64,000 nucleotides of DNA from Hyphochytrium catenoides (Eukaryota; Protista; Hyphochytriomycota). The notes under the pieces were generated by a model. That model was not told the origin of the DNA. It saw only the letters and a list, made by a program, of their open reading frames with translations, and did not search any database. The stretch spans positions 62,001 to 126,000 of the forward strand of contig FLMG01001299.1 of NCBI GenBank assembly GCA_900088475.1, written 5' to 3'. Below, one piece after another: positions 44,010-61,906 of this stretch (the stretch's first letter is position 1; every line of letters starts with the position of its first letter). The position numbers and the translations under genes were made by a program.

Positions 44010-47000
44010 TTACAACTGCGCATGCTCTCCAACGATGCGTTGGCCAGAGCCAACTTCTCCAGGAGGAGTCTCAATGACTGCAATATCTGTCGAGAGTCGA
44101 CCAAACGGCATACTGGGAACAAAGGTCCGGCTCTTTCTCGAAGAAGTTATCCTTGTCGGTAGTTTCCTCTCACTTGTTCTTTCGGACGATCTTCTGGTAC
44201 TAGTGCTTCGCCCCATAGGAGAAGAGAGCTTTTCTCGAAGAAGAGAAGAGTGCCGCACGTTGCTGCGTCTTCCAGTCCCTACTGATACCATGTCAAGAGA
44301 GACTCGTCCTAGGTCGCCATCCGTTACTCCACTCGTCCTCAGAGGAGTCTCGAGTCCGATCCACTCCGTCTCCCCGCAATCAAAGAATGAGTCATCGCGA
44401 GGCTTATAACTCACTGCCCCAGGGTAGATGCTCGCAATGGAAGAGGAGAGACGCTCTCTACCGCTCATTCTGCTCTTCCTACTGGGCCTCCCAGCGGCAG
44501 CAGGGCTCCTGCCCGTCAAGTAAGAAAGGCGCGGGTTGGTGTAGGAGCTACGGCTTCTTGGGATTGAACTGCGAAGTTCTGCTCCGGAAGTGATCGAGCT
44601 CCGTCTGAGCTCAACCTGAGATCTAAAGAGGCTATCTGCATTCGGGTTTCTGGCGATCGTCATTGAGAACTTATCAAGCTCTCCCATCATGCTTGCCCGC
44701 TCCTCATATGGTTGAATCGTGCTCAGAATCCAGGCAAACTCTTCCTCTGGACCGCCGGCCTGCTCAGCGGCACTGGTGACGTCTCTTCTCGCCAAGCGGA
44801 CTTGGCTCATCCTATTGGCTATCCAGAGTTGCTGTTCGTGGTTAGAGCAGTATCTTCCTATCGAGAAGAACTTGATCAGCGTCTCTCTATACAGCGAGCC
44901 CCAGCGCTGTCTAAGAGCTGTGACAGCTGGATCCAGCAGACGTGCTGTTAGCTTCTCTGCCGTCCACTCGCCAGAGTTCCAGTCTATGGCAGGGAGGCCG
45001 CCTCCCAACTCACAGATGGTCGAAGAACATGCGAGCACCTCCAGTTGAGCTCTTCCAAGGGCGAGAGGCTCTACCGGCGGGACTACGCCGCCAAAGTTGC
45101 CAACAAGATCCTTCGTTCCACCTGCGTCCGTGGCCGCAATAGGTAGCCCTGCCAGCCCTGCTTCTATAATGGCCATAGGTAAACCCTCCGAGATAGAAGA
45201 GTTAACAAATATGTCTCCCTGTGCCAGTACTTCTAAAGGCTTTGCCAAGCCCATCAGAGAGACGTGCTGGGCTAAGTCTAGGTCGCTTATTGCTTTTTCA
45301 CAGAGCGCTGTGTATGCCAGATCCTTCGTCTTCGAGCCATAGATGAACAAGCGATAGCACTTGATGCCGTGAATGTTAACAATGGCATTTGCTGCATAGA
45401 TGGCGTTCATAATATCCTTCAGCCTGTAGACATGAGACAGCATCACCGCGGTGACGTAAGCATCGTCCCTGTTCTGCCAGGTGTTCAGTTTGATGTGTGC
45501 GGAGTTTTGCCCGTTGACAATTGGAGAGATACTCCTTTGCATCTCAACTCTCTCTGCTGGAGAAGAGTACTCTGTCCCGATAATTCTCTTTTCCCAATCC
45601 ACATTGCTACTAACATTGCACGGGGCCACAATGTCTGCTTTCCATAACACTACCTTGGAGCACAGCCGGATCAGCCCCAGCAAAGCGCTTCGTACAAAGA
45701 GACTCTCAGAGTGCAATTCGGAGACTGCCAAAGCTCTCTCTCTCCATAGAATGCCGTGGTCCCATACAACGAGGCTCCAGCCTGCTAACTGCTTGGCAAT
45801 CACACCCAAAAGGCCCTGAGGACCGTGATGGGAGCAATGCATCATCCCGGTATTATCCCGGTTCAGCGTAGGGAATGGTACTTGCAGGCACATCAAGTGG
45901 CAAACCCAGAGCTCTAGAGCACGGTCCAGGTCAGCCAGAGCTGGAGGCTCAGCCTCGTAAGCCCTGTAGCCAGAGGGAGGGAGGAGCCATTGCCTTGACC
46001 AGCATTCATGCACAGCTCCATTGGACCAAGTCTTCTCCCAATCAAAGACAGTAAAGTAGACATAAAGCTCCGTGAATGCTTCAGCCGCATCTTCAATATC
46101 GCTGATGGAGATCTCATGAGCTCTTGAGAGCTCGATGATCCTCGCAAAAGCAGGGCAAAAGCGCTCTTGCGTGATCTCCATTGTAGTTCTATGGCTCTTG
46201 ACACTCACCGTGAGAGCAGATTGGAAGGCCAAGAAGTTCTCCAGCGCTCCACCCAGGTTAGGGCTCCATAGAGGTGTCACTAGCAGCTGGCTGACGTTAG
46301 GTTCTATCTTCTCGTTGGGAGGAATTGGTGCGATCCACCCCGCCTCTGCAATGGCATGCCAGCGTATTCTCTCCATAGTGCCCTGCACCAATTGACCGCG
46401 ACAAGTAGCCACACCTCCCCCATTTAAGGGCCACGTACCGGAGTCTAAGCAGACGACGTGCAGTTTAGAGGTGTCTGTCCGCCGTACGATGCTCTCATGG
46501 ATGTTCCAGTTACCAGCTGTGGCCCCTCCTCTGGCGAACTGTCTCAGATCATCCCACTGCGTCAACTCATAGACGTTTGTCTCTGCAAGGGCAACTTCGA
46601 TAGTATCCTGAAGAAGGAATATCTCATCCAATGCTTCCTGAAAGCGCCCTGAGTAGCGAAGAGAGAAATAGTACAGGAGAGACGGCTCCCGCTCAAGAAG
46701 CCAGAGCTCCAGACACTCTGCAGTCGTGGCGGGGATAGCTTTAGAAGTCATAAACTCTACCAGAGCTTTTCTGCTTGTCTGAAGCCACTCCAGGTCAAAT
46801 GACCTCCCTCCTTCCAGATCTCGTCCACTCTGTCTCTCGCCTTCTCCCACCACCGAGACAATCTCTGCTCTTCCCCCTTCCCCTGGAGGGGTGACAACAG
46901 CCTCCTCAGTGCTCTGCAGCTTTTTTCTCCTGGAAAGGCACGGCAGAGAGAAGAAAGAGCGACGGGTGGTATCTACAACTTTCTTTCCTCTCCCGCTGAC

Positions 47001-50000
47001 CCTCTTACTAACGAGACTAGGCTGTGGTCTAACCTTAGCGAAGAACTCTTCAACGAATGGGTCTCCAGACCAGATGAGCCAGTCCATCAATAACCATCGG
47101 ATCACCGACGCGAACCGATGAAGCATACAGAGAGTCTTCTTCGCTGCTTTGCCTATCTTTCTTCCTCCTTCCCTTTCTACCTCGAAGAGATCCTGAGAGA
47201 AGCAAACGTCTCCGCAAAAAGTGGCGAAGACGAGCGGAAGCCATGGATTCACCTCTTTCACTGCCTCTTTGAATAGCTGGTCTTTGTGCTGAACAATCCA
47301 TTTGGTATTTTGCATAGAAGAGGCCCATTTGCTGCTTCCTAGTTGGCTCTCCACACCGACGGGTATCACGTTGCTTACGAGCCTCTTAGCGGCCTCTTCC
47401 ATTACGCAGAGGGAGAGGCCAACCCGTAGAGAGAGGCGCGTCGCCGCACTCTGAATGTGCCTCTCAAATGCCTCAGGAGAATAAAGATATTTGTCCTCAG
47501 ATTGGTGGAGCTCTGCCCACGTCTCCCTAAAGATTCTAAAGTCCTTGCAACCGATAAGTTGGCACAATTCCTCACTGCTTTGGATCACAGAAGACACATC
47601 GGAGCTGACATCATCAGTGGGCAGGCGGTAGATCAAGCGGATGGCCATCTCTCTGGCCGAGGGTGAGAGGGCCATCCACCTTCCAGAGTTGACGGAAGAG
47701 CAGGATAGCACACTGGCCGCGCAGGAAGGAGTGCGATCAATGAAGGAGAGAAGTGCCGAGGCGTCTGACCACCTGTTCACCTGTACCAGCATGCGAGACG
47801 GAAGTAGAGCAGCCTCGGACCGCGGAAGGGAGAGAGCGGCTGGGGCGAAGAGCTCCGCCAAGACGCCCAGATGATGCCTCCCCGTCTCCTCCTCTAAGGA
47901 TTCGTGGATCACTGCCTCCATCCGGGTCAGCTCATTCTCAAACACTGTCTTCGCCATATATAGAAACATCTCCTTTTCTCTCTCGCGGACAGCCAAATGT
48001 CTATGACTCAGCAGACAGCTATCTGGGACCACAGCAACCTTCCAGGTGTACCTCTTTCCCTTTAAAAGACCATCATAATCCCTTAGGGCTGTTTCCACTA
48101 TGGGTGGAAGTAGTGAAGGGCCAGAAGGGAGCTCCCATGTGACCTCTTGAACTATAACGTTCTCTTTCTCTGATTGTTCGGCAAGCCAACCCCTACAAGC
48201 CTTAAGAGCTAGACTTTCCGGCCGTGATAAGAACGTTTTATCTATCCCTAGGAATCGCTGCCCACTGTGGCCAATGTCAGGGTTTGCCATCAGAAGACCG
48301 GTTGATAAGCCATTGTTATACATGAGAGAGTGCATCCCTCGCATCAAGATGAACGAGAGAAGAGCGTACAGCACCCCTGTGATAGGAAGGGCAGTGAACG
48401 AAAGATCCCAGCACGGCCCAGGACTGGTTGGAGAGAGACAATCAGGAGCATTTACCACGTAGGAAAGAACGACATTGGCGACAACTCCTCCACTTAGCCC
48501 TATCAGGGTAGAGATGGCGGCCAGAGCGATGCATCGTCCCTCATAAGCCTTTCCTATGCAAATCTTGTGTACGAGACCAAATAGGATACCGGTATATCCC
48601 ACCAATTTAGAGGCGAAGAGCGTGATAGAGTACCATGACCAGTCTCTCGCAGCTAATAGGGCCAGCAAAATCACACCTCCTCCAACCGCAAGGCACACGT
48701 AGCCAAAGGAGGCCATCGCTTCGTGATACCAGCTTTCGAGGAATTTAGTCCCTCTTTTCGTAGCTTCTTCTACGGCTTCATAGGTGTCAGAACGCACGTG
48801 CAGCCAGTCTGCCCTCTTGGCATGCCGGATCAGGTAAACACTTTCCAACGCTACAGAGCAGAAAATCAAATAGACGACTGACATAAAGTCTGCAAAAGGC
48901 GCGTTGGGATCTGACACAGGGGCGCCATATCGGGTCCAAGCTCTGAGAAGAAGGTCTGACATGATCATAACCATGTACACTGTGCCAAACACTGCGTCGT
49001 TTTTGATCAGGTTCCAGAGGGTGCGAGCCATCTCCATACGAACCATAGCATTCTTTTCCAGAAGGGATATCTGGCTTCGTACCTGTGCCAGAAGAGAGGG
49101 ATTCATTAGCAACTGAGGCAAAGAAGACAAAGATGCGGAGGACAGATAGAAATGAGAAAAGCCAAGCGCAAGGAAAGCAAGAGAAGTTGCCAGAAAGCCA
49201 CCGCAAAGGTTATGTTGGGCGAGCAAGTATAGCCAAGGAACTGAGCTTGCTCTCAATGACAAAAAAAGGCCGAAACAGAAGCGATCAAATGCAGCAGACC
49301 TCAAGAACCTCACAGAACAGATAATACAGAAAGGAGAAATAGCCAACTTCCTCGCAGCTAAGTTGCACCTACCAGGTACTCATCCCAAAGAGAAGTGTCT
49401 CTTTCAGGCATGTCCAAGCCTCTGACAATGCAGTCATACTGGATCAAATAGAACTCCATGTCGCGGTCGAGGAAGCCCCAACGGCGCTTAAACAACAGTT
49501 TGTCTGTCATCCAGAGCCCTTTCCGCAGCTTTTCATAGAATAAACTCTTAGCTTCCACCTCTGTTAGCGTGGGATGCCTCTCATACCATTGCTTCCATTC
49601 GACGTCAGTCAGAGTAACAACTGTGCCTTTCCTAATTGAGTCCTTAAACCGCTTGATATTCCGCAGCCAACCCCAGATAAGGAGAAGCATGAAGAGAGAG
49701 AGTCCGGAGAAGTAGACAATCACATCCGCTGTCTTAGAAAGGACGCCACACTCATGAAGGATTGGCGACACTAGAAGGAGAGAGGTGGCGAATATGACAA
49801 TTCTACCTCCGAACGTGCTCCAGTGTCTTCCACCGTTTGTGGCGCTGATCAAAGAAAGGAGCATCACATAGACGCCCGCTATTCCAAAGCCGCCAATGAA
49901 AACGAGTGACTCTATTGGTGTCCAAACTGAGAGCGAGATAAGGAAAAGGAGGGGCAGAAGGAAGGCGTTGAAGATGAGGAAGACTGTCATCACGAGCACT

Positions 50001-53000
50001 TGTGCCACTGCTAACTTAGTAATGAGCCACCGATAGTAGTTGTATGCCACAATCTTGGCTGCAGCAAAGGATATACCACCATAGAAAGCGATAGAATGAA
50101 TGATGGCGAAGGTCAGCACTCTCTGATGCTCTATAGAAATAGCATGCGGACTCACAAGAAGAGACGAACCCAATGCCGCACGCAGGATAAGCTCCAAAGC
50201 CATAGGAATAAGGAAGAAAGAGATGGACACGCCTCCCTGGAGAGCCAGCTTCAAGTTGTCCTTTTTGAAGACTCTGTCTTTTAGCTTCGTGAAAGGGTTA
50301 ACTTTGGTCAGGAGAGGCTCTTCTAACTTCTTGGAAGCAAAAGCAGCCCCTGCAGTTTGTTCATGATAGCCCGCGGAGTGGTCAAAGGCAACTGCTTCTT
50401 GTCTAACCACTTCGTTGACCACTTCTCCGATCGTGTCGAGGTCTGACTCGACAAAGTCTAACATGAACTTCTTATGGTCCCCTCTCATCTCCATCAGCAC
50501 CATCTGAACATGAGGATCATATGCAGGGAAAGGAGAGGCAGCTCTGTTGGCGAGGACGAGGTAGCGAACCATACCGACAGCGCCGTCTTTCTTAAAGACA
50601 TGCTCGTACAGCCACTGGCAGCCGATAGATGAAGCGAGAGGGGCGAACTCATCAGCATCCTTTGGAACCCGGCGAAGGAAGGTGGCCAGGACGACGCATA
50701 ACATGTTAAAGATATCACGGGCTTGGCTGCTCCAGGGCATGGCCTCCCATAGTTCCGTCACCGTCGCTCGCTTGTTCACTTTGGAGGTGATTTTTCTAAA
50801 GGTGCTTGTCTTTGCCGCCCCTGCTGTAGACAAAGAAGCACCGGTCGTAGATTGTACCGCATAAAGAGATTCTGTCCACTTCTCTCTCTGGGCAAAAGTT
50901 CTAGTTCCTCGGAGAGAAGCTACCACGGCCTTCCTCAGTCCCACAACTACCCCATTGTAGATAACCTTCTCCTGTGGATGCTGGTACGTCGCTTGGTCGA
51001 GAACCCCTGATGCTATGCGCAGGAGCCAGAGAAAGGATGCCTTGTCTTGTACGCTCATAACTTTCTCTAGGTCAAACAGAGCTGTGGTAGACTGATAGGA
51101 AAACGGCCGGATAGACATACTTCCTTCCTCATGGCTCCCTTCTGTCTTTATGTGCGAGACACAGTCTACCATTGAATCTACTGCGTGACAGAGGAAGAGG
51201 GGTGCGCCCTTAGCCCTCAGGAAGCTCCAGACTACAAGTGCTGGCGGACTAGGATGATCTCGGTTGACAAAAACATAATAGTCTCTCCTCCCAAAATCGT
51301 CTAGCCTGGATGACATCACCGCGTGGAACTGTACGAAGCAAGCCTGAGAGTCTGTTCCATCGTGGTACATGAGGGCACGAGGATCCACTGGAAAGACCAT
51401 CATCCGCTCTGTTACGTCACCTCCCAGATCCTGAGTGCCACCAAGCAGGAGAGAGTGGAGCACCGCAGGGAAACGATCAAGATCCCCGTAACTCTTGAGG
51501 ATGTCATAGACAGTCTGTACCTCCTTCGGAGCGGCACTTTCCGTAGTAAGGCGGTCCAGAGAGCTGATTACGGTCAGCATCTCCGCCCACAGGGAGCGAT
51601 TTAACGCATCCTCCGAGTCTGGATGTAGAGCCTCGATACAGTCACTGTCTAGCAGGTACTCGCAATTGGACGTGACAAGGTCAAATACAGAGCGCCTCAC
51701 CTGGCAGCCCATAGTATGCACACCGGTAGAGCTTTCCAGATAGCTCTGAAAAAGATCTTCCTCTAAAGGAGACACATTATCTTCCTGCACACCGTCCACT
51801 TCAAGGAAACTATACAGCTCATCTCCCCAGATGGCCTTCTGAGAGAGAGAGGAGACAGGATTGGGAGCTACAGCGGCAGAGTGGGACGACTGCATAGCCA
51901 TTATTTCTTCCAAGACAAACACCAAACTGGCACCATACTCGGCGCACCAGAAAGGCTTTTCGTCCTCTCCGAGGAGCTTCTCCACTGCTTCCTTAGTCGC
52001 CAGTAGCCACTCAGACTCGACACAATCCAAAGGGGAGACGCTGTCAAGATAAAGGAGAAGAGACTTAAGGTCCGCACAGTTGTCGCGGATCTGGCCAATG
52101 GGAGGGCAAAACGATCTAATCGGCTCTCCTCTCCTCTGCGCAGCTGCACTAGCTTGCGGTACCTTCTCTCTAACATCACACCACGCCTTGTGGAAGAGCT
52201 TGATATCCTCTGCACTAACTAGCTGGACAAAATTTAGAGGCTGGTACTCTCTCTTCCCATATACTGGAGCCATAAGACGATCATTTCTTTCATAAATCCA
52301 CCGTACCGCGCCTCGCATGCCCCAACCCTCAACGGTACTAAGAAAGAAGCTCACATCTACGTTAGAGTAGAAGCGATAGTCGAAGAGAGTCTTCTCTGTC
52401 CAAGGCACATAGTTAGTTTGAGGCACATAGCGCTGATCGTCGGGCACAAGCTTCGGGTCGAAGGCTGTGAACTTGATGGCGCTGGTGGCGTCCACAGATT
52501 CATAGGCAAGCACTATTAGCTCCTTGTCTTTCTTCTGTGCCTCTTGCAACATGGTGGTAAAGGAGGTCCGGGACTTGTAGATCTCATTGCTATGAGTGAA
52601 CTGGAATCGCCCTTCGATATCCAGGAAGCGGTTCCGGATGACTACTCCAGCAACATCTATGCCATTCAGTGCCTCAGAGTCCATGATGAAGGCGTCTCCA
52701 TTCTCTAGTAAGATCCTATAGTCTGGGGCTTCACCTGCAAAAGCTAAGAGCCATTCCCGAAGATGGTTCCACTGTGTTCGAGTGGCCGATGAGGCTAGGA
52801 CGGGAATGTGCTGCACCAGTATGCCATCAATATTGCTGGACCGTGACATAAGATGGCTTGCCAATTGCCCAGGAAGCTTGTCGAGGGCAGCCAGCTGCAC
52901 TTCGTGCTCAGGTGCGGCTTCATTAAACCCTGGCAAGATGTCATTAACCGAAACCTGCAAGATCCTATAGAAGCTGCGCCCCTGGCAGTGCCGGCAGTCG

Positions 53001-53170
53001 ATAACATTGCCTTCCTCTTGCAACTGCTTTTCCAATAGCTTCAGCGGCACGAAGACAATATCTGCTTCTACCTTGTCCACGTTGTCATAAAAGCCAAAGC
53101 TGCGACAGCTATGCCACTCAGCCCGACGCGCTAGGCACGAGCATGAAGCAGCAGGGATCGAATCCTTCAT
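44010..53170 (-). CDS. ~2,950-aa multi-pass membrane GT4 glycosyltransferase (PelF/DUF3492-type; fungal Gtb3-like)
   Basis: Exons 53170-49373 and 49082-44010 are joined by phase-0 intron 49372-49083 (CTG|gtaggt ... gctaat ... tctggcacag|GTA). PelF-like motifs: DSGTWPLNGGGV, VWDHGILWRER, VMLSHVYRLKDI, NSSISEGLPMAIIEAGLAGLPIAATDAGGT. Central block of many hydrophobic helices. Two small in-phase upstream exons could move the start to ATG 53477. Confidence 0.85.
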
Positions 53171-53767
53171 GCTGAATGATGCGGTCAGATGGAGGTAACT
53201 ATTATTGCCTCCGTTCCACAGCTCTCAGCATGTCCATCGGCCTTACACTGGAGATTGCGCAGAGCTTAATGTTGTACCTAGAAAGCTTCAGCCAGGACTT
53301 GCTGACGCAAAACCTACCCCGATAGACGATTTGTCGACTGAGGGAAGCTTCAGCCAATAAGCACAAGGCCTCCGCACCTCTTAGTGCGGTATCTCCAATC
53401 GAGGCAGACTAACCGTTGTGACAGCTGTGCACAGGAGCGGGGACGAGCTTAATGCAGAGCGACTGCGGGCGGTGCATGTCTATCCCGCGTCACCAAGTCA
53501 AGCCACACAAGATCGACAGAGATGGAGACGAAGACGGGAAGGGAGGTTAGGAAGATAAAGCAGGATCATAGGCGTAGGCGTGCCTGAGACTGCAGCTGGT
53601 CGCGAACAATCAAGGATCCTCTGCTTCTCTTCTTCTGAGAGGTGGATGAGGACAGGAAAGCGGAGAAAGAAAGGTGCACACTTTGGCCGTCTTCTGCTCC
53701 TTGTGTCCAAGCTGCTCAATGCTGAGTTTTACTGCCGATGATAGACAGACAGAGTGAGGGCACGGCA

Positions 53768-53787
53768 CCTATATACCCCTATATACC
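53768..53787 (-). promoter_or_regulatory. Duplicated TATA-like box upstream of the GT4 gene
   Basis: Exact 10-bp tandem duplication, reading GGTATATAGG x2 on the minus strand, ~290 nt upstream of the candidate ATG at 53477. Confidence 0.4.
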
Positions 53788-56297
53788 TCCATCGCTAGAT
53801 AGGCCTGCCTTTGCGACCTGTGGTGTGGTCGGACCAGTGTCCCCTCACGTTCTGCTGACATTTTGCTTCTCAATTCGACTCCATAAAGGAAGGGCTGGTC
53901 CATCTCTCTTATCTCTCTGTCTCGCAGACGGCTCAATTATATAGAGATAACACAATATATTACTTCCTCTCTGTCTTGCCTAATCTGTTGATGCCTGTCA
54001 AAGAAATCCAGGTCTCCGTTTCTCAAACCTTCTCTCTGTCTCTTCGTGCTTTGGGGTCTTAGTCCTTTATCCCCTTGGATCTGTCTAGTACTCCGTGAAA
54101 ATACTCGCTCTAATACCAATGAAGGAGTTACACAAAAGTAATATCTCTTGCTTACTCTTTCTCCATAGGTCTGGGTTCTGTCGTCTGTCTCGCCATCATC
54201 AAGAGTCACTCTAATAGGAAAGGACATACTGTCTGGACCTAGACTCTACCTATTACTACTTCACCCCCAACCTTGAACATCAGCAGGTTTTTCACCCACA
54301 AGCCTTGCATACTACTAGAGGCCATCTTGTCCAACTCAAATAAAAACAATATCTCCTACCACGAAAGAATTGAAACCTATGAAACAATGCTCCAGTCGAT
54401 TACAAGCTTGATTCGATGAAAGAATTCAATACTTTCAGGGAATGATTAATGATCTAGAACGGGAATCGGGCTGGCTTTTTCCAAAAGAGACAGTTCAGCT
54501 TCATTCTGCGCTGTCATTGGTCAAGGCGTCTCATCTTATTCAAAGGCTGGAGAAACAGTTTTGCGTTGGTTTATGATTGTAGGTCGTAACGGTAGTGCAT
54601 CGCTACAGTAGTAACATACTGGCATGGCACCACCTCCATCATCAGCTCTACTATTATCGCATTATCGCAGCTATCCTCACCGCGCCAACAAGCTCGTCGA
54701 CTCATCGATCATCGCCGTCCCACTCCCTAAGGACGACTCTTTGTGACGATGAGGGTTAACTCTAGGCTATCTTAAAGAACCTTCTGGCACTTGATTGCTG
54801 CTCGTCGGTAGCGGGCCGTGTAGTATACATAGAACTATATATCGATGACGTAGTAGCACAGGTAGAAATGGCACTACTCTCTGTAGCAATAACTGGCCTG
54901 TGCTTGTCTATCTTGTATCACGTTCCTCCATAGGTACAGGAGGTGGTCTGCACACGTCAACTGGGTGGGGCCGCTTTCCTGGCCGTTGATGATCAATGAC
55001 GATGATTGATGTAGAATGTCCTTTGCCCGACCATTTGTCAAGTACTGCATCTACTGGAAATAGAGTAGGTCAATCCCTAGGTGCACTTGATGCAGCTGAT
55101 CTACAAACTCTACGTGCTCTCGAACTTCCAGATACGTGTAGAGCTTGAGCTAGAAGGATTGTCAACCTGTTGCCCTTTCAAGCGCTGTACAAGCGCTGTA
55201 CAATACTGCACCCTTTTTTAAATTACAAGCACAAAGAAGCACTAGTTAGTAGGGTGGTGGAGTTAATATAGTGACACATTTGCTATGCGCGAAACACAAT
55301 TACTACTTGAGTCCTGCACCGCTTTCGTTTCTTCGTAATAATATAAAGACGAGGTAAGAAGATGACTTAGCCGAGCTTCATGATGATGGACAGTTCCGAC
55401 GACAAGGGCTACGACCAGCGAGAATAAAAAAAAGGTTGATGCTACTGACCTCTTCGTGAATCTCAAAAGTGCCCAAACTGCCCTCACACAGTCCAACTCG
55501 TCGGAGACATTGCAGTGCGAAGAGAGGCAGGTTCTCGACCCATTGCTATGACGCATAATCATGAGTACATCATACCGCTGATGAGCTGTAAGTAGTACTG
55601 GAAGCAACAAGCAAGGACGACGAACGACGAGCACGAATCATAATTAGTGGCCTCCTCCACTACTACTCATCTTCCTTCCTCCCTAGGGAGTACCATGGAC
55701 CGTCAGTCATGACATTCGGGACTACCTCCTCCACTGGAGTCTTTCTTATTGGCGGTAGCATTATTTCCGGCAGAGCCTCTTCAAACTTATAAAGCGTCTA
55801 TTAATACAGACGCGTGCTGACATTATCATCAACGCCCCAACCAATTGCACATATGCACTTCATCAGCCGCCACGATGGGACGGATACCCCCCACCCTAGC
55901 ACCACCAGTAAAATCTATATCTAATAGTGTGTTGACGCGACCTATCGAGATTCAATACCCCCCCGATGATGCTCCGTCTTCAGATGCTCGCGTCCTCAAC
56001 AGTTTAATTCTCCTATCTCTTAGGATAAGCGAGGAGACTGCTTGATGGTTGATTCAGAGATCACAGCGGCAACCGTTATCATCCGTCATTCTCGCTCAAC
56101 CTAGCTAGTAGTAGAAGAGAAGTATTGTCAATCATCTCCATGAAACGTCAAGAGTAATGTAAGAGTGGAGTGTTGCTTGCGCTCACAAGCCCCCGTCTGA
56201 TTGGCCTGCTTTTTCGTCGTCAACACCTATGCATTGATCTTTAAGTAGCTGGAGATACTGGACGAGAACGCGACAGCCTCGTGAGCTCGTATTAGAA

Positions 56298-56344
56298 TGC
56301 TTGTGGGGACACCTGCTTGTGGGGACACCTGCTTGTGGGGACAC
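56298..56344. repeat. 16-bp tandem repeat, ~3 copies
   Basis: TGCTTGTGGGGACACC x2 plus TGCTTGTGGGGACAC, head to tail with no spacers. Confidence 0.9.
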
Positions 56345-59300
56345 AACTTTTGGGTACCAAGGGTATCGCCGTTGCGTCTCTTCCCGATCGTAGCAGAAAC
56401 AATCGTCAGGCTCCCTGTTCTCGAACATACTTTCATTTCCTGTCCCGATCACCAGTTGTCAGTACGCGGAAGTATTACGCCACTGGCCGGATGGATTATG
56501 CCAATGTAGTGATCACAACATGCAACAAGCAACAGTCGACAAAACACGAGAAGGTCAGAATTTGTATGTCTTCTTGCATTTAGTTCTTACCTTGCGGCCT
56601 CTTGGCCTGCTGTCCTTCTCGGTAGCAGCACCACAGTCACCAAAAAAGGAAGGTGAAAGAGGTCCACGTAGGTCAATGTATCCTATTTACTACTAATCGA
56701 CTTTAGTCGATCGAGATGGAGGAGGAGGGCAATGTGATGAATGTGGGCCCTTATTAATCATTCTCTACTAACTGCAGCGCGCACTCAAAGGTCCAAGCAA
56801 ACGATGGATTGGGGGCCAAGCTGTGTCTGCTTTAATCATGCTCTTGCTAAAGCGGGCTCTCTTTCAGTCTAGATTCGTGAAGACTACAAATGCATGCCAC
56901 CACTTCTACAAACGATGGGCATTACCTAATCGGAGGGCACTAAGTCATCAACAACGAACTGCCACCAGAAATCTGGGCGGTGGGTTTGGGACGGAGCACA
57001 GTGCCTTACCATGAGGGAAGCATTTTTCATCCACAGTCTACCCCTCCGTGCTTCTTGGATTGGTCCGGATCCTTTTTCTTCCTGCGGTCTAGCTAGCTAC
57101 GATTTTGACAATGCTCTTCTTCTTAATCTGTGATGGGCTAATATTATCAAGTAAGATATCTTGAACGAAGTACAAGCGATCCGCTACCACCCACAAACAA
57201 CAGCCATGTCCTTAATGCCCTCCACTATAGGAACCCGATAGACAGCTAAAATGTGTAGGTGGAACTCCCGCTGGAATAGTCTTCTGGACGCGAAAAGAAC
57301 AAGAAGTGATCATTTGAAAATTTAGCTCCCTGCTTATCGTATTACAGCAGGCAGGGATTGGAAAAACGTGCAATGCACAAGAACAGATACTAGTGAAATA
57401 TCTCTCTCTGGGTGCTTGTCGCCGCTTCCAGTATAACCTGCGAACTGAAAGAGGACAATCGACCTGCACCACTTCCGCCGCCGTTGCTAGCTTTGCGTCG
57501 ATCCCATGCCCTACAATCTTCACTGCAAAGCACTCGTCGTTTTAGAGTGCCCAACAACACTGGGTCAACGCTTGCATCATCACACTCAACATCGCTTTAC
57601 AAGTCTCTTTGTGGTGGCAGTGTGTCTCCGTTGGAGAAGAGCCAACTTCCCTCCAGGCAATAAAGCTCAAGGCTGTCGATCAGGGACCCCACAAGCAACG
57701 CAATAAGGAAAGCTGGAAGGATCAAGATATCATTATTATCCAGTCAAGAGTACTTCAAGGTTTGCAGAAACAAAAATATTCCCAGGGTCGGAAGTGTCAC
57801 AGAAGATCGGCCGGATAGTTTATTACGACCAGCGTGGGCCCTGCAGCAACAAGATTCTATTTTTCCGTCCCTGATGACATGCAGGGCCAGAAACAATCAA
57901 CTAGCTGCCGTAGTAATGGACAAGAAGAGAGGATGCTCAACTTTGCTTAGTACGATGTAAACCCTGTCACGCACAAGATCTTAGAAGATAACTTCAAGAA
58001 TCACTGAATGCGTCACAAGAACAGAGTTAAGGTAAAGCCAAACGATCCATCATGTGTGTGGCCAGAAGATTATGATCGGACTATTGACGGACTTTCTACA
58101 GGCAAAACTTTTGAGCTTCAAGGTTAACCTTATCAGACTAGCAACCGTCATAACATTGATCATGTCCGACCTTTATTAGGGGGGACAAAGATAGTGGGGC
58201 GATGGAGCACGAATGCACAAGTATGCTTCTTCAAGAATTGCCCTACTAATATTGACTGGTGGAAGAACCTTGTATGCCAAACTACAGACTGACTTACTTC
58301 CTGCCCCTGTATCTGGGCGCCATTGCTCTTCTTGAAGTTCAGGTGTGGCAACACAAAGGAAAAGAGAAGGGCCAAAGGCGAGACTCCATCTTCATTGGCG
58401 TCCGCTGAATGCTATGGCCTTGTATCTAGAACTGCACATTCTGTTGGCAGCAAAAAATCTATCATCGTACTTCTAGTATAGCAGAATAATGGAGGCATCT
58501 CTTGCTGTCTCAGGCTCTCCCTCTCTAGAACTAGGGGTTACTGTGGAATACCACTTCCAGTCTGGCGCAAGCAAAGAAGAGAGAAACAAGAATCAGAAAA
58601 TTTCGCTGTGCCAGGATGTTGCCCTGTCATCCCTAGCACATAAGGGCTTTGTATTGCAGGGGGCAGTTTTTATCTTCAATATACAGTACCGCCCGCAGTT
58701 GCAATGTGACCAAAGATGGTTGCTACACTGACTCACAGAAAATTGGAGATAATTCAGTTGTATGATAAAGCGCGTGTCATCATGTCTGCAGTCATCATAA
58801 TAAGCTCCAGAAGTCCTGCATTTCAGTCACTTCAAAGGTAGAACTAGATCGCCCTTGTAGCGCTATAGTGGGAATCGTTTTATGACCAAGTATTATGAGA
58901 TTCCGTCCTAATATATCGCAATCTACAGGTATACCCAACCACAACAGTCATTATGACAGAGTGGTGTGAGGTTAGCCCTTATGCTTCTAGTGGTATGGGG
59001 CTAGGCGAGCCCAAATGGTAAGTATAATTTCCTATTATATTCGCAAAATCCATCTAGCTTTGACCTAAAAGACAAAAGACCTCCATCTACAAGGCTACAA
59101 GAGACACTACAAATGTACCTACAAAATTATGCTTCGTTCGGGAGAAGGTCCTACCGTAGGTCCTACCGCTTTGGGCATTGATGACTGTAGAACTCTACAA
59201 GCTTCTTACCCCATCGGATGGAGCCAACTCCCAAGCTTCTTTCGATAGCACAGCGGTATTGTAAGTTTGGGCTTTGAATTCTCTACAGCAGTCCAAAGAT

Positions 59301-60997
59301 TGCGCCACCTAACACGGACACAATGTGTTTGCCCTGCAAGTTATTCTGACTTGCTACCAAAAGAAACATTTCTCTCCGCGCTTATAGGGCCATTTGTTGT
59401 AAATCTTTCATACAGTTCTACCTTTGGGCAAATGGAAATATTTGAGGAAGGTTTAGGTCTTCCATTGCAACTTCGACATAGCAGCCCAAAATGTCCTAAA
59501 ATGTGACCTAAACTACCAATGCGCTGAGAGGTATCTACCAATCAGAAACAAGGACCTTTCCGACTGCGAGAGGGCTAAAAAAAGAGGTTTTGGCCAAAGA
59601 CGCTATGTTGTTTAGGGGCAAGTGAGAGTGATTTAGGGAATAAGACCTTGAAAGCGGGAATAAACATAGTGGTAGAACCGTGACAAAATAGAAACCATGA
59701 TTCCAAGAAAGGTTCTATTGAACAGGTCTAAACATAGGGCCGAGAAGGATTACTTACTATAGCAAAGGAAACGGAGGCCCCTCAATCATGCTTCGTGTAC
59801 TTTCTAAAACTCTAGCGGGGGATAAGACGGAATGGGAGCAGCGATGCAGCGAAGCAGTACAATAAGATAGTAGATAACACTACGGAAAGGGGAAAAAGCC
59901 AGAGTGCTTGGATTGTGGAAGAGCCTAGAGGCATGATGATGGTTGATGACCAACACGCGTCAATGTGAACCAGCCGTGGACCTGGCGGGAACAATCTCTG
60001 TCTCTTGAAGCCTCGTCATATATGTCTCTTCTTATAAGTCATAGTTCCTCAGGATAACCAATCACTCTGTCTGAATGTTTCCTGGCTCTTTCTTCGTCGG
60101 AGCCCCTTTCTCTACTTGTCTTAGGTGAGCTTTGTGCTGTGTGCAGTCTTTCGAGGTGTGATGACTGAGGGACTAGACGTGCCTACGAGGCAAGCCGCAG
60201 CTTCACATCCTGCCTGCCTCTTGGATGATGGTGATGATCACTAAGAAGGAAAGAAAGGATGATGAGTAGCGTTGAACCTGGGCAAGATAAACTAGAGAAG
60301 GGAATGTGGCAGCTGGAGGACCAGGGAAGAAACGGCAAGGTGAGGTGAGGCAGCTTTGGAACCCTGTTTATCTCCCGAGACCGGTTCTGACGAGACTCTC
60401 GTCTGCCTCCTCATCACCTCAACCAGTATGCTGGAGGTCCATGTTCCAACCACATGATGATAGGGAAAGGTCTAAACAAGAGGGAGGACAAGTGGAGCCA
60501 TCCCTATCAACCCTTGCTTGCTGGCATTGATTGAGAGCTTCCGCCAAAAGCTGGACCGGCAAAGTGAAAAGATAGGGAAGAGAGAGAGAGAGAGAGAGAN
60601 NNNNNNNNNNNNNNNNNNNNNNNNNNNNNNNNNNNNNNNNNNNNNNNNNNNNNNNNTTACTTATATACTCCGGAGTAACAATTAGTCCTTCGTCTATCAA
60701 AGTTGATGCCCTTGACTCCACATTAATATTGTTCCAGCAAAGTAAACGACATGGTTCGACATGAGATCCTGCGTAGCTAAGGATGATTGATCAGGACTTC
60801 TGAGACGTTCCTCACAACCAATACAGAAAGATTCTAAGGCAGGAGTCTCGCTTTTTGTCCGCCACAACGACAATAACCAGCACGGGCGCAACCCTCCGCC
60901 CGCGTTATCCACCGCTCTCCACTCCCAACCGCCATCCTGTTAAATTATCCTTATCCTTCAATTCCTACAGAAGCTTGGCAGGAAGAGATCTAACAGC

Positions 60998-61906
60998 ATG
61001 TTATTATCTATGGCTTATCGAAGAACGCTTCCAAATGGTTCTTCTATGGGGTACCACAGAGAGGCGACGCCAACACCCACCGGCTTGCCACAGATCTCAG
61101 GCGATGAGCTTTCCACCCTATTCGACATTCTTGTGGAGGATCACCAGCAAACCCATCTCCCAATATACCCTGCATCTTCACTTGTCCCACAAGCGGCGGT
61201 CACTGCCACCTTTCCCGGCAAAGCACCTAGTTACCATGAGCTTTATACCATGCAGGTGCAGGCGCCATCGCCAGTCACTGCCAAAGAAATGGCTCTGATG
61301 ACTCCAAACATGCACTATGTTATCCAGCCACACTCTATGGCTGCTCCCATCCCTCCTCCGCGGAGAAAAACTAGGCGGAACAGTAAGCCATGCTCTTTCG
61401 AGAACTGCAAGCGAATGGCAAGATCGAAGGGTCTGTGCAAAGCACACGCTGAGAACACTAAATGCAGCTTTGGAGACTGCACAAGACAAAGTCAAGGCAG
61501 GAACCTCTGTGTGAAGCATGGAGGCGGAAGGAGGTGCGAGGTGGAGGGGTGCAGCCGAGCCGCACAGAGCAAGAGAAGATGCAAAGCACATGGCGGCGGG
61601 CCAAGGTGCACGTTCCCTGGTTGCACAAAGAGCAGCCAAGGAAGTGGCAAGTGCCGCACTCATGGTGGTGGCCCCAGATGCAGGGTTCCTGGATGCAACA
61701 AAGGGGTACAGCGGCTAGGCCGTTGCGCCTCCCACAGCGCTTTGGCAAGCGAACAAGGGCAACACCAACCTAATAAGGAGTCTGTAGAAGGACAAGGCGT
61801 TGTGTTTGAACAGGAGCAAGAGCCAGAGTTCGAGGAGGAGGATCAGAGCCCACCAGCGTCAGACACCTCCGAACTCGCATGGGAAGGATCGGACTTTGAC
61901 TTATAG
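60998..61906 (+). CDS. C-x4-C-x9-C-x2-H-GGG zinc-finger repeat protein (WRKY19-N-terminal-like repeats), single exon
   Basis: Five tandem repeats such as CEVEGCSRAAQSKRRCKAHGGG and CTFPGCTKSSQGSGKCRTHGGG, with a Pro/Gln-rich N-terminus and acidic tail. No WRKY domain. Confidence 0.85.
   Translation: MLLSMAYRRTLPNGSSMGYHREATPTPTGLPQISGDELSTLFDILVEDHQQTHLPIYPASSLVPQAAVTATFPGKAPSYHELYTMQVQAPSPVTAKEMALMTPNMHYVIQPHSMAAPIPPPRRKTRRNSKPCSFENCKRMARSKGLCKAHAENTKCSFGDCTRQSQGRNLCVKHGGGRRCEVEGCSRAAQSKRRCKAHGGGPRCTFPGCTKSSQGSGKCRTHGGGPRCRVPGCNKGVQRLGRCASHSALASEQGQHQPNKESVEGQGVVFEQEQEPEFEEEDQSPPASDTSELAWEGSDFDL

What the first reader, a model, noticed from the sequence alone, without database searches (positions are those of the whole stretch)
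44010..53170. Giant Gtb3/PelF-like exopolysaccharide synthase in an apparently non-fungal eukaryote
Seen: two huge ORFs splice into one ~2,956-aa protein with a soluble N-terminal region, a central multi-TM block and a C-terminal GT4 carrying GTWP...GGV, HGILWRER and SISEGLP...EA motifs. Known: these motifs characterise bacterial PelF (Pel polysaccharide), and a very large membrane-bound form is Gtb3, the galactosaminogalactan (GAG) synthase of Aspergillus and other fungi. Inference: the flanking genes point to a flagellated, stramenopile-like host, so this may be an alpha-1,4-Gal/GalNAc adhesive or mucilage polymer system in a lineage where I know of no description of it.
Basis: partly seen in the sequence, partly recalled or inferred. 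Interest (0 to 1): 0.88.

Follow-up and report, generated by a model that had tools for sequence, protein, structure and literature searches.

The report
Giant Gtb3-type polysaccharide synthase, protist
An oomycete-like protist carries an intact 2,956-residue gene of the family that makes the sticky galactosaminogalactan polymer in moulds; this extends a "fungal" biofilm-sugar machine to a non-fungal lineage, but it is a new member of a known family.

Summary
Two minus-strand ORFs (53170-49373 and 49082-44013) join across a 290-nt GT-AG intron into a 2,956-aa protein. It has about 980 soluble N-terminal residues, 12 hydrophobic segments (6+6), a middle soluble domain, a PelF-type GT4 domain (Pfam DUF3492 + Glyco_trans_1_4) and a Ser/Arg-rich tail.

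It is collinear with the roughly 2,800-aa fungal Gtb3 family from about residue 980 to 2700. That family includes Metarhizium Gtb3, whose gene sits beside an epimerase and two Sph3-type genes. An uninterrupted metagenomic homologue runs straight across the splice junction.

Allelic or strain differences in a DNA run are 16 synonymous to 3 non-synonymous in the exons and crowd into the intron, so the gene is under selection.

In a tree, the eukaryotic proteins form one clade apart from bacterial PelF. The window protein pairs with an unnamed environmental sequence and lies outside both fungal clades.

A confident model of the homologous Metarhizium membrane block has the MOP (MATE/MurJ/Wzx) exporter fold, which suggests a fused exporter and PelF-like polymerase.

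The 64-kb window holds no GAG partner genes. The host looks stramenopile (soft evidence). The sugar made is untested. Verdict: a new member of a known kind, of moderate interest.

The parts
44010..53170 (-). Whole gene: two exons, 2,956-aa Gtb3-type synthase (stop codon 44010-44012)
49373..53170 (-). Exon 1, aa 1-1266
   Evidence: all 11 SNPs seen here in a DNA run are synonymous
49083..49372 (-). Intron, 290 nt, GT..AG, GC 0.46. It has in-frame stops and is not a multiple of 3; it carries 8 SNPs and a 1-nt indel between alleles
   Evidence: homologues run across the junction without it
44013..49082 (-). Exon 2, aa 1267-2956
50231..53170 (-). N-terminal soluble region, aa 1-980: no Pfam family and no full-length relatives by phmmer
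52091..52933 (-). N-terminal alternating beta/alpha domain, aa 80-360. It aligns weakly with the N-terminus of fungal Gtb3 proteins; a GH191/PelA-hydrolase-like barrel is a lead only
49667..50230 (-). Hydrophobic segments 1-6 (aa 981-1168)
   Evidence: hhalign to the fungal profile 98.4%, E 9e-15
48342..48995 (-). Hydrophobic segments 7-12 (aa 1296-1513)
   Evidence: hhalign 99%, E 9e-18; the homologous Metarhizium block models as a MOP fold
46773..48341 (-). Middle soluble domain, aa 1514-2036, with a conserved HExxE...H motif at aa 1659-1670 (47871-47906)
44781..46772 (-). PelF-type GT4 catalytic region, aa 2037-2700 (Pfam DUF3492 at 45633-46454; Glyco_trans_1_4 at 45033-45443)
44013..44750 (-). 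Ser/Arg-rich C-terminal tail, aa 2711-2956 (43 S and 32 R in 246 residues), probably disordered

Best explanation
This is an intact, selected, two-exon nuclear gene for a single-chain, synthase-dependent exopolysaccharide synthase of the Gtb3 family. Gtb3 is the ~300-kDa putative galactosaminogalactan synthase of Aspergillus. Shown here: the C-terminal domain is a PelF-type retaining GT4 with every residue that is invariant between a bacterial PelF-like protein and the eukaryotic forms. The 12-segment membrane block and the middle domain are homologous and collinear with fungal Gtb3 proteins. The homologous membrane block of Metarhizium Gtb3 models confidently as a MOP-superfamily (MATE/MurJ/Wzx-like) 6+6 transporter. 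Inferred: with 12 membrane passes, the N-terminal region, middle domain and GT4 domain all face the cytosol. The GT4 domain polymerises UDP-activated hexosamine, most likely UDP-GalNAc with or without UDP-Gal, giving an alpha-1,4 GalNAc-rich chain as in Pel and GAG. The fused MOP-like module passes the chain across the plasma membrane. On this reading the protein combines in one chain what bacteria split between PelF and a membrane partner encoded next to it. Outside the cell the polymer would be made cationic and adhesive by Agd3-type deacetylases and trimmed by a Sph3-type hydrolase. Other notes of this scan report such genes elsewhere in this genome; I did not verify them. The genes are not clustered here.
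For: Gene model and motifs. Pfam DUF3492 + Glyco_trans_1_4; best NCBIfam model is PelF. All 17 plasmid tblastn hits at E<=1e-8 are PelF-type (15 annotated pelF, one DUF3492 protein, one 'icsA'). BLASTP of the GT region to chytrid proteins of 2,800-2,900 aa gives E ~1e-100 at 34-41% identity. hhalign to a 21-member fungal full-length profile: aa 983-1265 at 98.4% (E 9e-15) and aa 1282-1954 at 99% (E 9e-18), collinear. Pairwise HSPs cross the exon junction. The metagenomic protein P0049 aligns to aa 700-1692 (E 8e-80) with exact contiguity at the junction. The profile includes P0028, Metarhizium album Gtb3, whose gene neighbours an epimerase and two Spherulin4 genes; Metarhizium GAG production is published (PMC8224951, title and abstract). 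Gtb3 is described as a 300-kDa transmembrane glycosyltransferase (PMC9860509). The 6+6 hydrophobic pattern is shared with fungal members. The membrane-block model has pLDDT 78.9 and pTM 0.79; its top ~47 PDB matches are all MOP transporters and the AlphaFold DB matches agree. Purifying selection: 16 synonymous to 3 non-synonymous differences. Base composition matches neighbouring host genes. Bacterial pelF operons carry GH114, Spherulin4 and epimerase genes, the same enzyme set as the fungal cluster.
Against: No transcript spanning the junction was seen. Only two short contigs from RNA-labelled runs match the exons, and they could be DNA. Identity to the characterised ascomycete clade is only about 30% in the GT domain, and the protein lies in a separate clade, so donor and acceptor specificity cannot be transferred with confidence. 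None of the GAG or Pel partner genes lies in the 64-kb window. The membrane block shows no sequence similarity to PelG. The MOP fold was modelled on the Metarhizium homologue, not on the window protein itself. The first ~980 residues are unexplained. Even for Aspergillus Gtb3 the enzymology is unproven.
Confidence: 0.6

Rival explanations
1. It is a true Gtb3-family synthase, but this clade makes a different polymer (another hexose or hexosamine, or another linkage) with a different role, such as a cyst or spore wall or a cell-coat component.
For: It forms a separate, well-supported clade with an environmental sequence, outside the ascomycete Gtb3 clade. GT-domain identity to Metarhizium Gtb3 is only about 30%. 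It scores below the PelF equivalog cut-off (69 against 100 bits). No partner genes lie nearby. No member outside Ascomycota (plus Trichosporon) has a characterised product.
Against: All detectable bacterial relatives on plasmids are PelF-type, and PelF is described as polymerising UDP-GalNAc. Other scan notes report Agd3-type and Spherulin4-type genes in the same genome, enzymes specific for alpha-1,4-GalNAc/GalN polymers; I did not verify those notes.
Confidence: 0.3
2. It is a recent horizontal acquisition from a fungus or bacterium, or an assembly contaminant, and not a resident gene of the host lineage.
For: The gene has one intron in 9 kb while its neighbours are fragmented into short ORFs. 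It is unclustered and next to a gene-poor stretch (another note of this scan). No oomycete protein appeared among the homologues found.
Against: It sits on one contig with eukaryotic genes (bZIP, dymeclin, PARN-like, Zf_WRKY19). It has a spliceosomal intron. Its GC (0.517) and GC3 (0.564) match its neighbours. It is present at normal depth, with two alleles, in the DNA runs. It is excluded from both fungal clades and from bacterial PelF with 100/100 support. Its closest named relatives are only 34-41% identical.
Confidence: 0.05
3. The two ORFs are separate genes, a membrane protein and a soluble PelF-like transferase as in bacterial operons, or the locus is a decaying pseudogene.
For: No spliced read was recovered. 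One contig of a run of unknown kind covers the acceptor unspliced (48990-49140).
Against: The frames join exactly at canonical GT/AG sites. Homologues are continuous through the junction, with the residue count matching exactly. Exon 2 has no plausible start upstream of membrane segments 7-12, which are the second half of one 12-segment block. Intact ORFs of 3.8 and 5.1 kb with a 16:3 synonymous to non-synonymous ratio argue against decay.
Confidence: 0.05

Closest known systems
Gtb3 of Aspergillus fumigatus and Metarhizium (putative galactosaminogalactan synthase, ~300 kDa)
   Same: Same size class and the same order of parts: soluble N-terminus, 6+6 membrane block, middle domain, C-terminal DUF3492 + GT4. 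Collinear homology runs from aa ~980 to 2700, and the catalytic motifs are conserved.
   Different: It lies in a separate clade, with about 30% identity in the GT domain and about 20% in the membrane block. It is not in a gene cluster with uge3, sph3, ega3 or agd3. The host appears to be a stramenopile, not a fungus. It has a long Ser/Arg-rich tail. Its N-terminal ~980 aa are barely alignable.
Chytrid and Neocallimastigomycota Gtb3-like proteins (uncharacterised, 2,700-2,900 aa)
   Same: These are the best named hits: 34-41% identity over the GT region at E ~1e-100, with the same architecture. The one chytrid locus checked (Gonapodya) is also unclustered.
   Different: The window protein is not inside that clade, which has 100/100 support without it.
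Bacterial PelF (GT4 of the Pel polysaccharide system) with its membrane partners PelD, PelE and PelG
   Same: DUF3492 + GT4 catalytic domain, with every column that is invariant between the bacterial PelF-like row and the eukaryotic rows conserved. The only plasmid-borne relatives are PelF-type. The operons carry GH114, Spherulin4 and epimerase genes like the GAG cluster. PelG is annotated as the Pel transporter/exporter; from my own recollection it also belongs to the MOP clan.
   Different: PelF is a soluble protein of about 500 aa, whereas here the transferase is fused behind a 12-segment module. The score is below the PelF equivalog cut-off. There is no sequence similarity between the membrane block and PelG. 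No c-di-GMP receptor (PelD) counterpart was found.
MOP-superfamily transporters (MATE, MurJ, Wzx)
   Same: Twelve helices in two bundles of six. The model of the homologous Metarhizium block matches them exclusively at the top of the PDB list, with probability 1.0 and target-normalised TM up to 0.57.
   Different: There is no sequence-level family match. A cytosolic insert of about 125 aa lies between the two halves. The block is fused to a polymerase, so the substrate would be a growing polymer rather than a lipid-linked unit or a drug (inference).

Membership tests
Gtb3 family (eukaryotic single-chain PelF-type synthases) | C-terminal PelF-type GT4 domain (DUF3492 + Glycos_transf_1) with an intact E-x7-E and the N-terminal GTxP..GGV motif | tested here: met
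Gtb3 family (eukaryotic single-chain PelF-type synthases) | One chain of ~300 kDa with a multi-pass membrane block before the GT domain, collinear with fungal members | tested here: met
   hhalign 98.4% and 99%; HSPs across the junction; the 6+6 pattern is shared; the size of Gtb3 is from PMC9860509
Gtb3 family (eukaryotic single-chain PelF-type synthases) | Groups with eukaryotic Gtb3-like proteins, apart from bacterial PelF, in a tree | tested here: met
   The eukaryotic clade has 100/100 support
Orthologue of the ascomycete GAG synthase Gtb3 | Falls inside or sister to the ascomycete Gtb3 clade | tested here: inconclusive
   It forms a separate clade with meta_P0079; the branching order among the eukaryotic clades is unresolved
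Orthologue of the ascomycete GAG synthase Gtb3 | Lies in a gene cluster with uge3, sph3, ega3 and agd3 | tested here: not met
   No tblastn or tblastx hit to these or to PelD/E/G in the 64-kb window. Partner genes are reported elsewhere in the genome only by unverified notes
Orthologue of the ascomycete GAG synthase Gtb3 | Needed for production of an alpha-1,4 Gal/GalNAc polymer | not testable with these tools
   Needs chemistry and genetics
Bacterial PelF (NCBIfam NF038011 equivalog) | Score above the curated cut-off of 100 bits | tested here: not met
   69.4 bits over profile positions 285-423 only
Bacterial PelF (NCBIfam NF038011 equivalog) | Soluble ~500-aa protein encoded in a pelDEFG-type operon | tested here: not met
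   Fused 2,956-aa eukaryotic protein with no pelD/E/G nearby
MOP (MATE/MurJ/Wzx/PelG) exporter superfamily, membrane block only | 12 helices in a 6+6 arrangement with the MOP fold | tested here: met
   The fold was shown for the homologous Metarhizium block, modelled with the window halves in the alignment. It is carried over to the window by hhalign and the shared hydropathy pattern, so for the window itself it is an inference
MOP (MATE/MurJ/Wzx/PelG) exporter superfamily, membrane block only | Sequence match to PelG or another MOP Pfam family | tested here: not met
GH114/GH191/GH166-type alpha-galactosaminidase barrel, N-terminal domain aa 80-360 | (beta/alpha)8-type fold matching these families, with the Asp/Glu catalytic pair | tested here: inconclusive
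   The model is poor (pLDDT 55). GH191/TM1410 fill the top 11 Foldseek ranks, but VIA Z of 8-8.7 is equalled by viperin and NifB. Profile comparison with GH114 is negative, and the PDB sequence search found no GH family. Catalytic residues could not be assigned

The most novel reading that the evidence does not exclude
Gtb3-type single-chain synthases (MOP-like exporter fused to a PelF-like polymerase, perhaps preceded by a galactosaminidase-like barrel) are an old, eukaryote-wide family kept patchily in fungi, a glaucophyte, green algae, marine protists and this stramenopile. On this reading the organism makes a Pel/GAG-like cationic GalNAc/GalN adhesive or wall polymer together with unclustered Agd3- and Sph3-type enzymes, so galactosaminogalactan-type matrices are not a fungal invention.
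Probability: 0.35. Interest if true: 0.7.

Novelty: new member of a known kind. Interest (0 to 1): 0.5.

Why it matters
In the literature I could search, galactosaminogalactan biosynthesis is treated as a trait of Pezizomycotina plus one basidiomycete (PMC4817252). Agd3 homologues are noted only in chytrids and bacteria (PMC7229062). I found no paper placing a Gtb3-type synthase in a stramenopile or any other protist.

A full-length, selected Gtb3 homologue in an oomycete-like protist widens the range of this adhesive-polymer machinery. So do the Cyanophora protein and the environmental clades seen here. The monophyly of the eukaryotic forms makes the origin of the family testable.

The confident MOP-fold model of the membrane block also gives a concrete hypothesis for how Gtb3 exports its product. 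A 2023 review says Gtb3 had not been modelled because of its size.

The practical weight is modest. The family, its domains and its likely chemistry are already known, and homologous sequences already sit unannotated in public databases.

Tried and rejected
- RNA support for the splice. The RNA-only run search listed nothing. Laying four runs gave no joint, only short exon contigs in two RNA-labelled runs.
- Relatives of the N-terminal 1,200 aa. phmmer against 1.84 billion representatives gave 11 short fragments only. The Atlas feature search gave nothing above 0.46.
- PelG origin of the membrane block. hhalign of Burkholderia PelG and of the Streptomyces PelG-position protein against the fungal profile was negative. 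No Pfam hit appeared even at E 10.
- GH114 homology of the N-terminal domain by sequence. hhalign was negative, and the PDB profile search returned only chance mGluR hits.
- Cluster partners in the window. tblastn and tblastx with bacterial and fungal partners were negative.
- Naming the organism. The PARN-like neighbour has only 27-30% hits, mostly to vertebrates, and the run ids are coded. Only soft evidence for a stramenopile host was obtained.
A single-protein query returned only Flavobacteriia, so plasmid records supplied the wider PelF sample.
- One literature query was badly built and uninformative.
- Recent horizontal transfer or contamination was rejected on composition, flanking genes, the intron and the tree.
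Full report
**Observation**

The window holds two very long minus-strand ORFs, 49358-53170 and 44010-49346. Only seven other ORFs in the whole 64 kb reach 200 aa.

Reading the sequence between them shows a GT at 49372-49371 directly after ..GAG TAC CTG. An AG lies at 49084-49083, preceded by a pyrimidine-rich stretch.

Exon 1 (53170-49373) ends on a codon boundary. Exon 2 begins in the frame of the second ORF at 49082. The intron is 290 nt, is not a multiple of three, and has a stop 13 nt in.

**Is the gene model right, and is the gene alive?**

I could not obtain a spliced read. The RNA-only search listed no run. No joint was reported.

Three indirect lines support the junction:
- The metagenomic protein P0049 (1,671 aa, filling a 5-kb contig) aligns to exon 1 up to its last residue at P0049 position 643. 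It aligns to exon 2 from residue 7 at position 650, so the residue count across the junction matches exactly.
- With the spliced protein as query, single BLASTP HSPs to P0049 (aa 700-1692, E 8e-80) and to many fungal proteins (for example aa 983-1474 to Cadophora, E 2e-12) run straight through residue 1266/1267.
- A DNA run at about 25x carries two alleles over the intron. There are 8 SNPs and a 1-nt deletion within about 150 nt of intron, against 19 differences in 5.6 kb of exon. Of those 19, 16 are synonymous and 3 are not, and all 11 in exon 1 are synonymous.

The gene is therefore coding and under purifying selection along its length, including the orphan N-terminal part.

**What it is**

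Pfam finds DUF3492 and Glyco_trans_1_4 / Glycos_transf_1 in exon 2 and nothing in exon 1. The best NCBIfam model is PelF, at 69 bits, below its 100-bit equivalog cut-off.

A tblastn of the GT region against 72,556 plasmids returned 17 records at E<=1e-8, all PelF-type. Fifteen are annotated pelF, one as a DUF3492 protein and one as 'icsA'.

In the 5.8-billion-protein collection the best named hits are chytrid and anaerobic-fungus proteins of 2,400-2,900 aa, at 34-41% identity and E about 1e-100. Pezizomycotina proteins of 2,500-2,900 aa follow at E about 1e-70. One of these, Metarhizium album P0028, is encoded beside an epimerase gene and two Spherulin4 genes. That makes it the Gtb3 of a GAG cluster. 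[quoted passage not shown]

**Homology outside the catalytic domain**

I compared the window protein with a profile of 21 full-length fungal proteins (A1):

| Window residues | Profile columns | Probability | E-value |
|---|---|---|---|
| Exon 1, aa 983-1265 | 730-1027 | 98.4% | 9e-15 |
| Exon 2, aa 16-688 (spliced 1282-1954) | 1044-1698 | 99% | 9e-18 |
| aa 111-341 | 98-278 | 58% | 1e-4 |

The GT region aligns by plain BLASTP at E 2e-106. Everything is collinear. The N-terminal match is weak but also collinear.

The first ~980 residues otherwise have no relatives. phmmer of residues 1-1200 against 1.84 billion representatives found only 11 fragments of 66-183 aa.

**Anatomy and mechanism**

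Hydropathy gives six segments at aa 981-1168, a loop of about 125 aa, and six more at 1296-1513. Neocallimastix and Metarhizium proteins show the same 6+6 pattern.

I modelled the Metarhizium Gtb3 block (P0028:792-1371) with an alignment that includes both window halves and P0049 (A5). The model has mean pLDDT 78.9 and pTM 0.79.
- Its best PDB matches are MOP-superfamily transporters almost without exception for about 47 ranks: MATE, the lipid II flippase MurJ and the lipid III flippase WzxE. Probability is 1.0 and target-normalised TM reaches 0.57.
- AlphaFold DB clusters agree: MATE, flippases and O-antigen/teichoic-acid exporters.
- No sequence similarity to PelG was detectable. A link to PelG, which is annotated as the Pel exporter, therefore rests on fold class only. 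Its membership of the MOP clan is my recollection, not a result here.

The GT domain keeps every column that is invariant between a bacterial PelF-like protein and the eukaryotic forms, including the E-x7-E of retaining GT4 enzymes.

With an even number of passes, the N-terminal region, the middle domain and the GT domain should all be cytosolic. The GT domain must be, because it uses nucleotide sugars.

The most likely mechanism is a fused exporter-polymerase. The PelF-like domain builds the chain from a UDP-hexosamine, and the MOP-like module takes it across the membrane. This step is inferred.

The sugar is inferred from family context. PelF is described as polymerising UDP-GalNAc. Bacterial pelF operons carry GH114 alpha-1,4-polygalactosaminidase, Spherulin4 and epimerase genes. 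The fungal cluster enzymes are GalNAc/GalN-specific.

**Evolution and host**

A maximum-likelihood tree of the GT region was built from 45 rows and 677 columns under LG+C20+F+G4. All eukaryotic proteins are separated from ten bacterial PelFs with 100/100 support.

Within the eukaryotes there are well-supported clades:
- ascomycete Gtb3 plus Caulochytrium;
- a chytrid, Neocallimastigomycota, Olpidium and Gonapodya clade;
- two environmental clades. One includes marine Tara/ENA contigs where a string of same-strand ORFs probably forms one giant gene;
- long branches for Cyanophora paradoxa (identified) and a protein labelled as a Monoraphidium MAG;
- the window protein paired 100/100 with a 676-aa Logan protein of unknown origin.

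The order of these clades is unresolved. The window protein is outside both fungal clades, so it is not a recent fungal or bacterial import. Its GC and GC3 match neighbouring genes. Its neighbours on the contig are eukaryotic genes: bZIP, dymeclin, a PARN-like nuclease and a five-fold Zf_WRKY19 protein.

Evidence on the host is soft:
- The nearest Atlas clusters of the Zf_WRKY19 neighbour are dominated by Oomycota.
- The PARN-like neighbour has no relative above 30% identity.
- Several follow-up notes of this scan call the genome an oomycete-like stramenopile. I did not verify those notes.

No oomycete protein appeared among the homologues. The gene is therefore rare in that group, or those capped searches missed it.

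**Context**

No homologue of Uge3, Sph3, Ega3, Agd3 or PelD/E/G lies in the window. The Gonapodya homologue is also unclustered. Other first-stage notes report three Agd3/CE18-like genes and one Spherulin-4/GH135 gene elsewhere in this genome. If real, they would complete a dispersed GAG-like toolkit. I could not read those regions.

**Weak leads**

- The N-terminal domain (aa 80-360) models poorly (pLDDT 55) but as alternating strand and helix. Foldseek puts GH191/TM1410 alpha-galactosaminidases in its first 11 ranks (E 5e-5 to 5e-4) and the PelA hydrolase domain at ranks 28 and 31. These belong to the barrel families that cut GAG and Pel (PMC12054363). However, VIA-align gives Z of 8.0-8.7, no better than viperin or NifB, and profile comparison with GH114 is negative. 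I count this as a lead only.
- The middle domain carries a motif, HESLEEETGRHH (aa 1659-1670), that aligns with a conserved VHExxExxxGxSH in the fungal proteins. Its function is unknown.

**Novelty and verdict**

The searchable literature confines the GAG cluster to Pezizomycotina plus Trichosporon. It notes Agd3 homologues in chytrids and bacteria. I found no description of a Gtb3-type synthase in a protist. Public sequence collections do already contain non-fungal homologues.

This is a real, intact, new member of a known family in an unexpected lineage. It is not a new kind of system.

Noticed in passing
window 52091-52933 (-), aa 80-360: The N-terminal domain models (poorly) as an alternating beta/alpha fold. 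Its top Foldseek matches are GH191/TM1410 alpha-galactosaminidases and the PelA hydrolase domain, the enzyme families that cut GAG and Pel. Sequence profiles do not confirm this, and a second aligner ranks unrelated barrels equally.
   Followed up: partly
window 47871-47906 (-), aa 1659-1670: An HESLEEETGRHH motif in the middle cytosolic domain aligns with a conserved VHExxExxxGxSH in fungal Gtb3-like proteins and with FHEVFEAVTSTH in P0049. It may be a metal-binding or catalytic site that I did not find described.
   Followed up: no
window 49083-49372: The DNA run carries two haplotypes that differ about ten times more densely in the intron (8 SNPs and a 1-nt indel in ~150 nt) than in the exons. 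This shows the sequenced sample is heterozygous or mixed.
   Followed up: partly
window 44013-44750 (-), aa 2711-2956: A 246-aa Ser/Arg-rich tail lies after the catalytic domain. It is not aligned to the fungal proteins and may be a regulatory, phosphorylated extension.
   Followed up: no
window 60998-61906 (+): An intronless ORF with five Zf_WRKY19 zinc fingers. Its nearest Atlas clusters are almost all from Oomycota, which is soft evidence for a stramenopile host.
   Followed up: partly
L033 (Streptomyces californicus plasmid NZ_CP070243.1) 4336-13771: A bacterial operon with pelF, an unnamed 468-aa protein in the PelG position, an SDR, a nucleotidyltransferase, a spherulation-specific family 4 protein and an endo-alpha-1,4-polygalactosaminidase. 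This is nearly the same enzyme set as the fungal GAG cluster.
   Followed up: partly
L041 214-13175 and L042 1854-13351 (marine metagenome contigs): A run of same-strand ORFs (1445, 79, 739, 1116 aa with DUF3492, and in L041 also 420 aa) is probably one giant Gtb3-like gene of a marine eukaryote, split by a prokaryotic gene caller.
   Followed up: no
L039 2-11603 (JGI metagenome contig): A 1,447-aa ORF ends 17 nt before the 2,413-aa Gtb3-like P0003 on the same strand. Together they may form a protein of more than 3,800 aa.
   Followed up: no
window 53171-60900: Few long ORFs lie upstream of the gene; another note of this scan calls this stretch a gene desert. I did not examine it beyond the ORF lists.
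   Followed up: no
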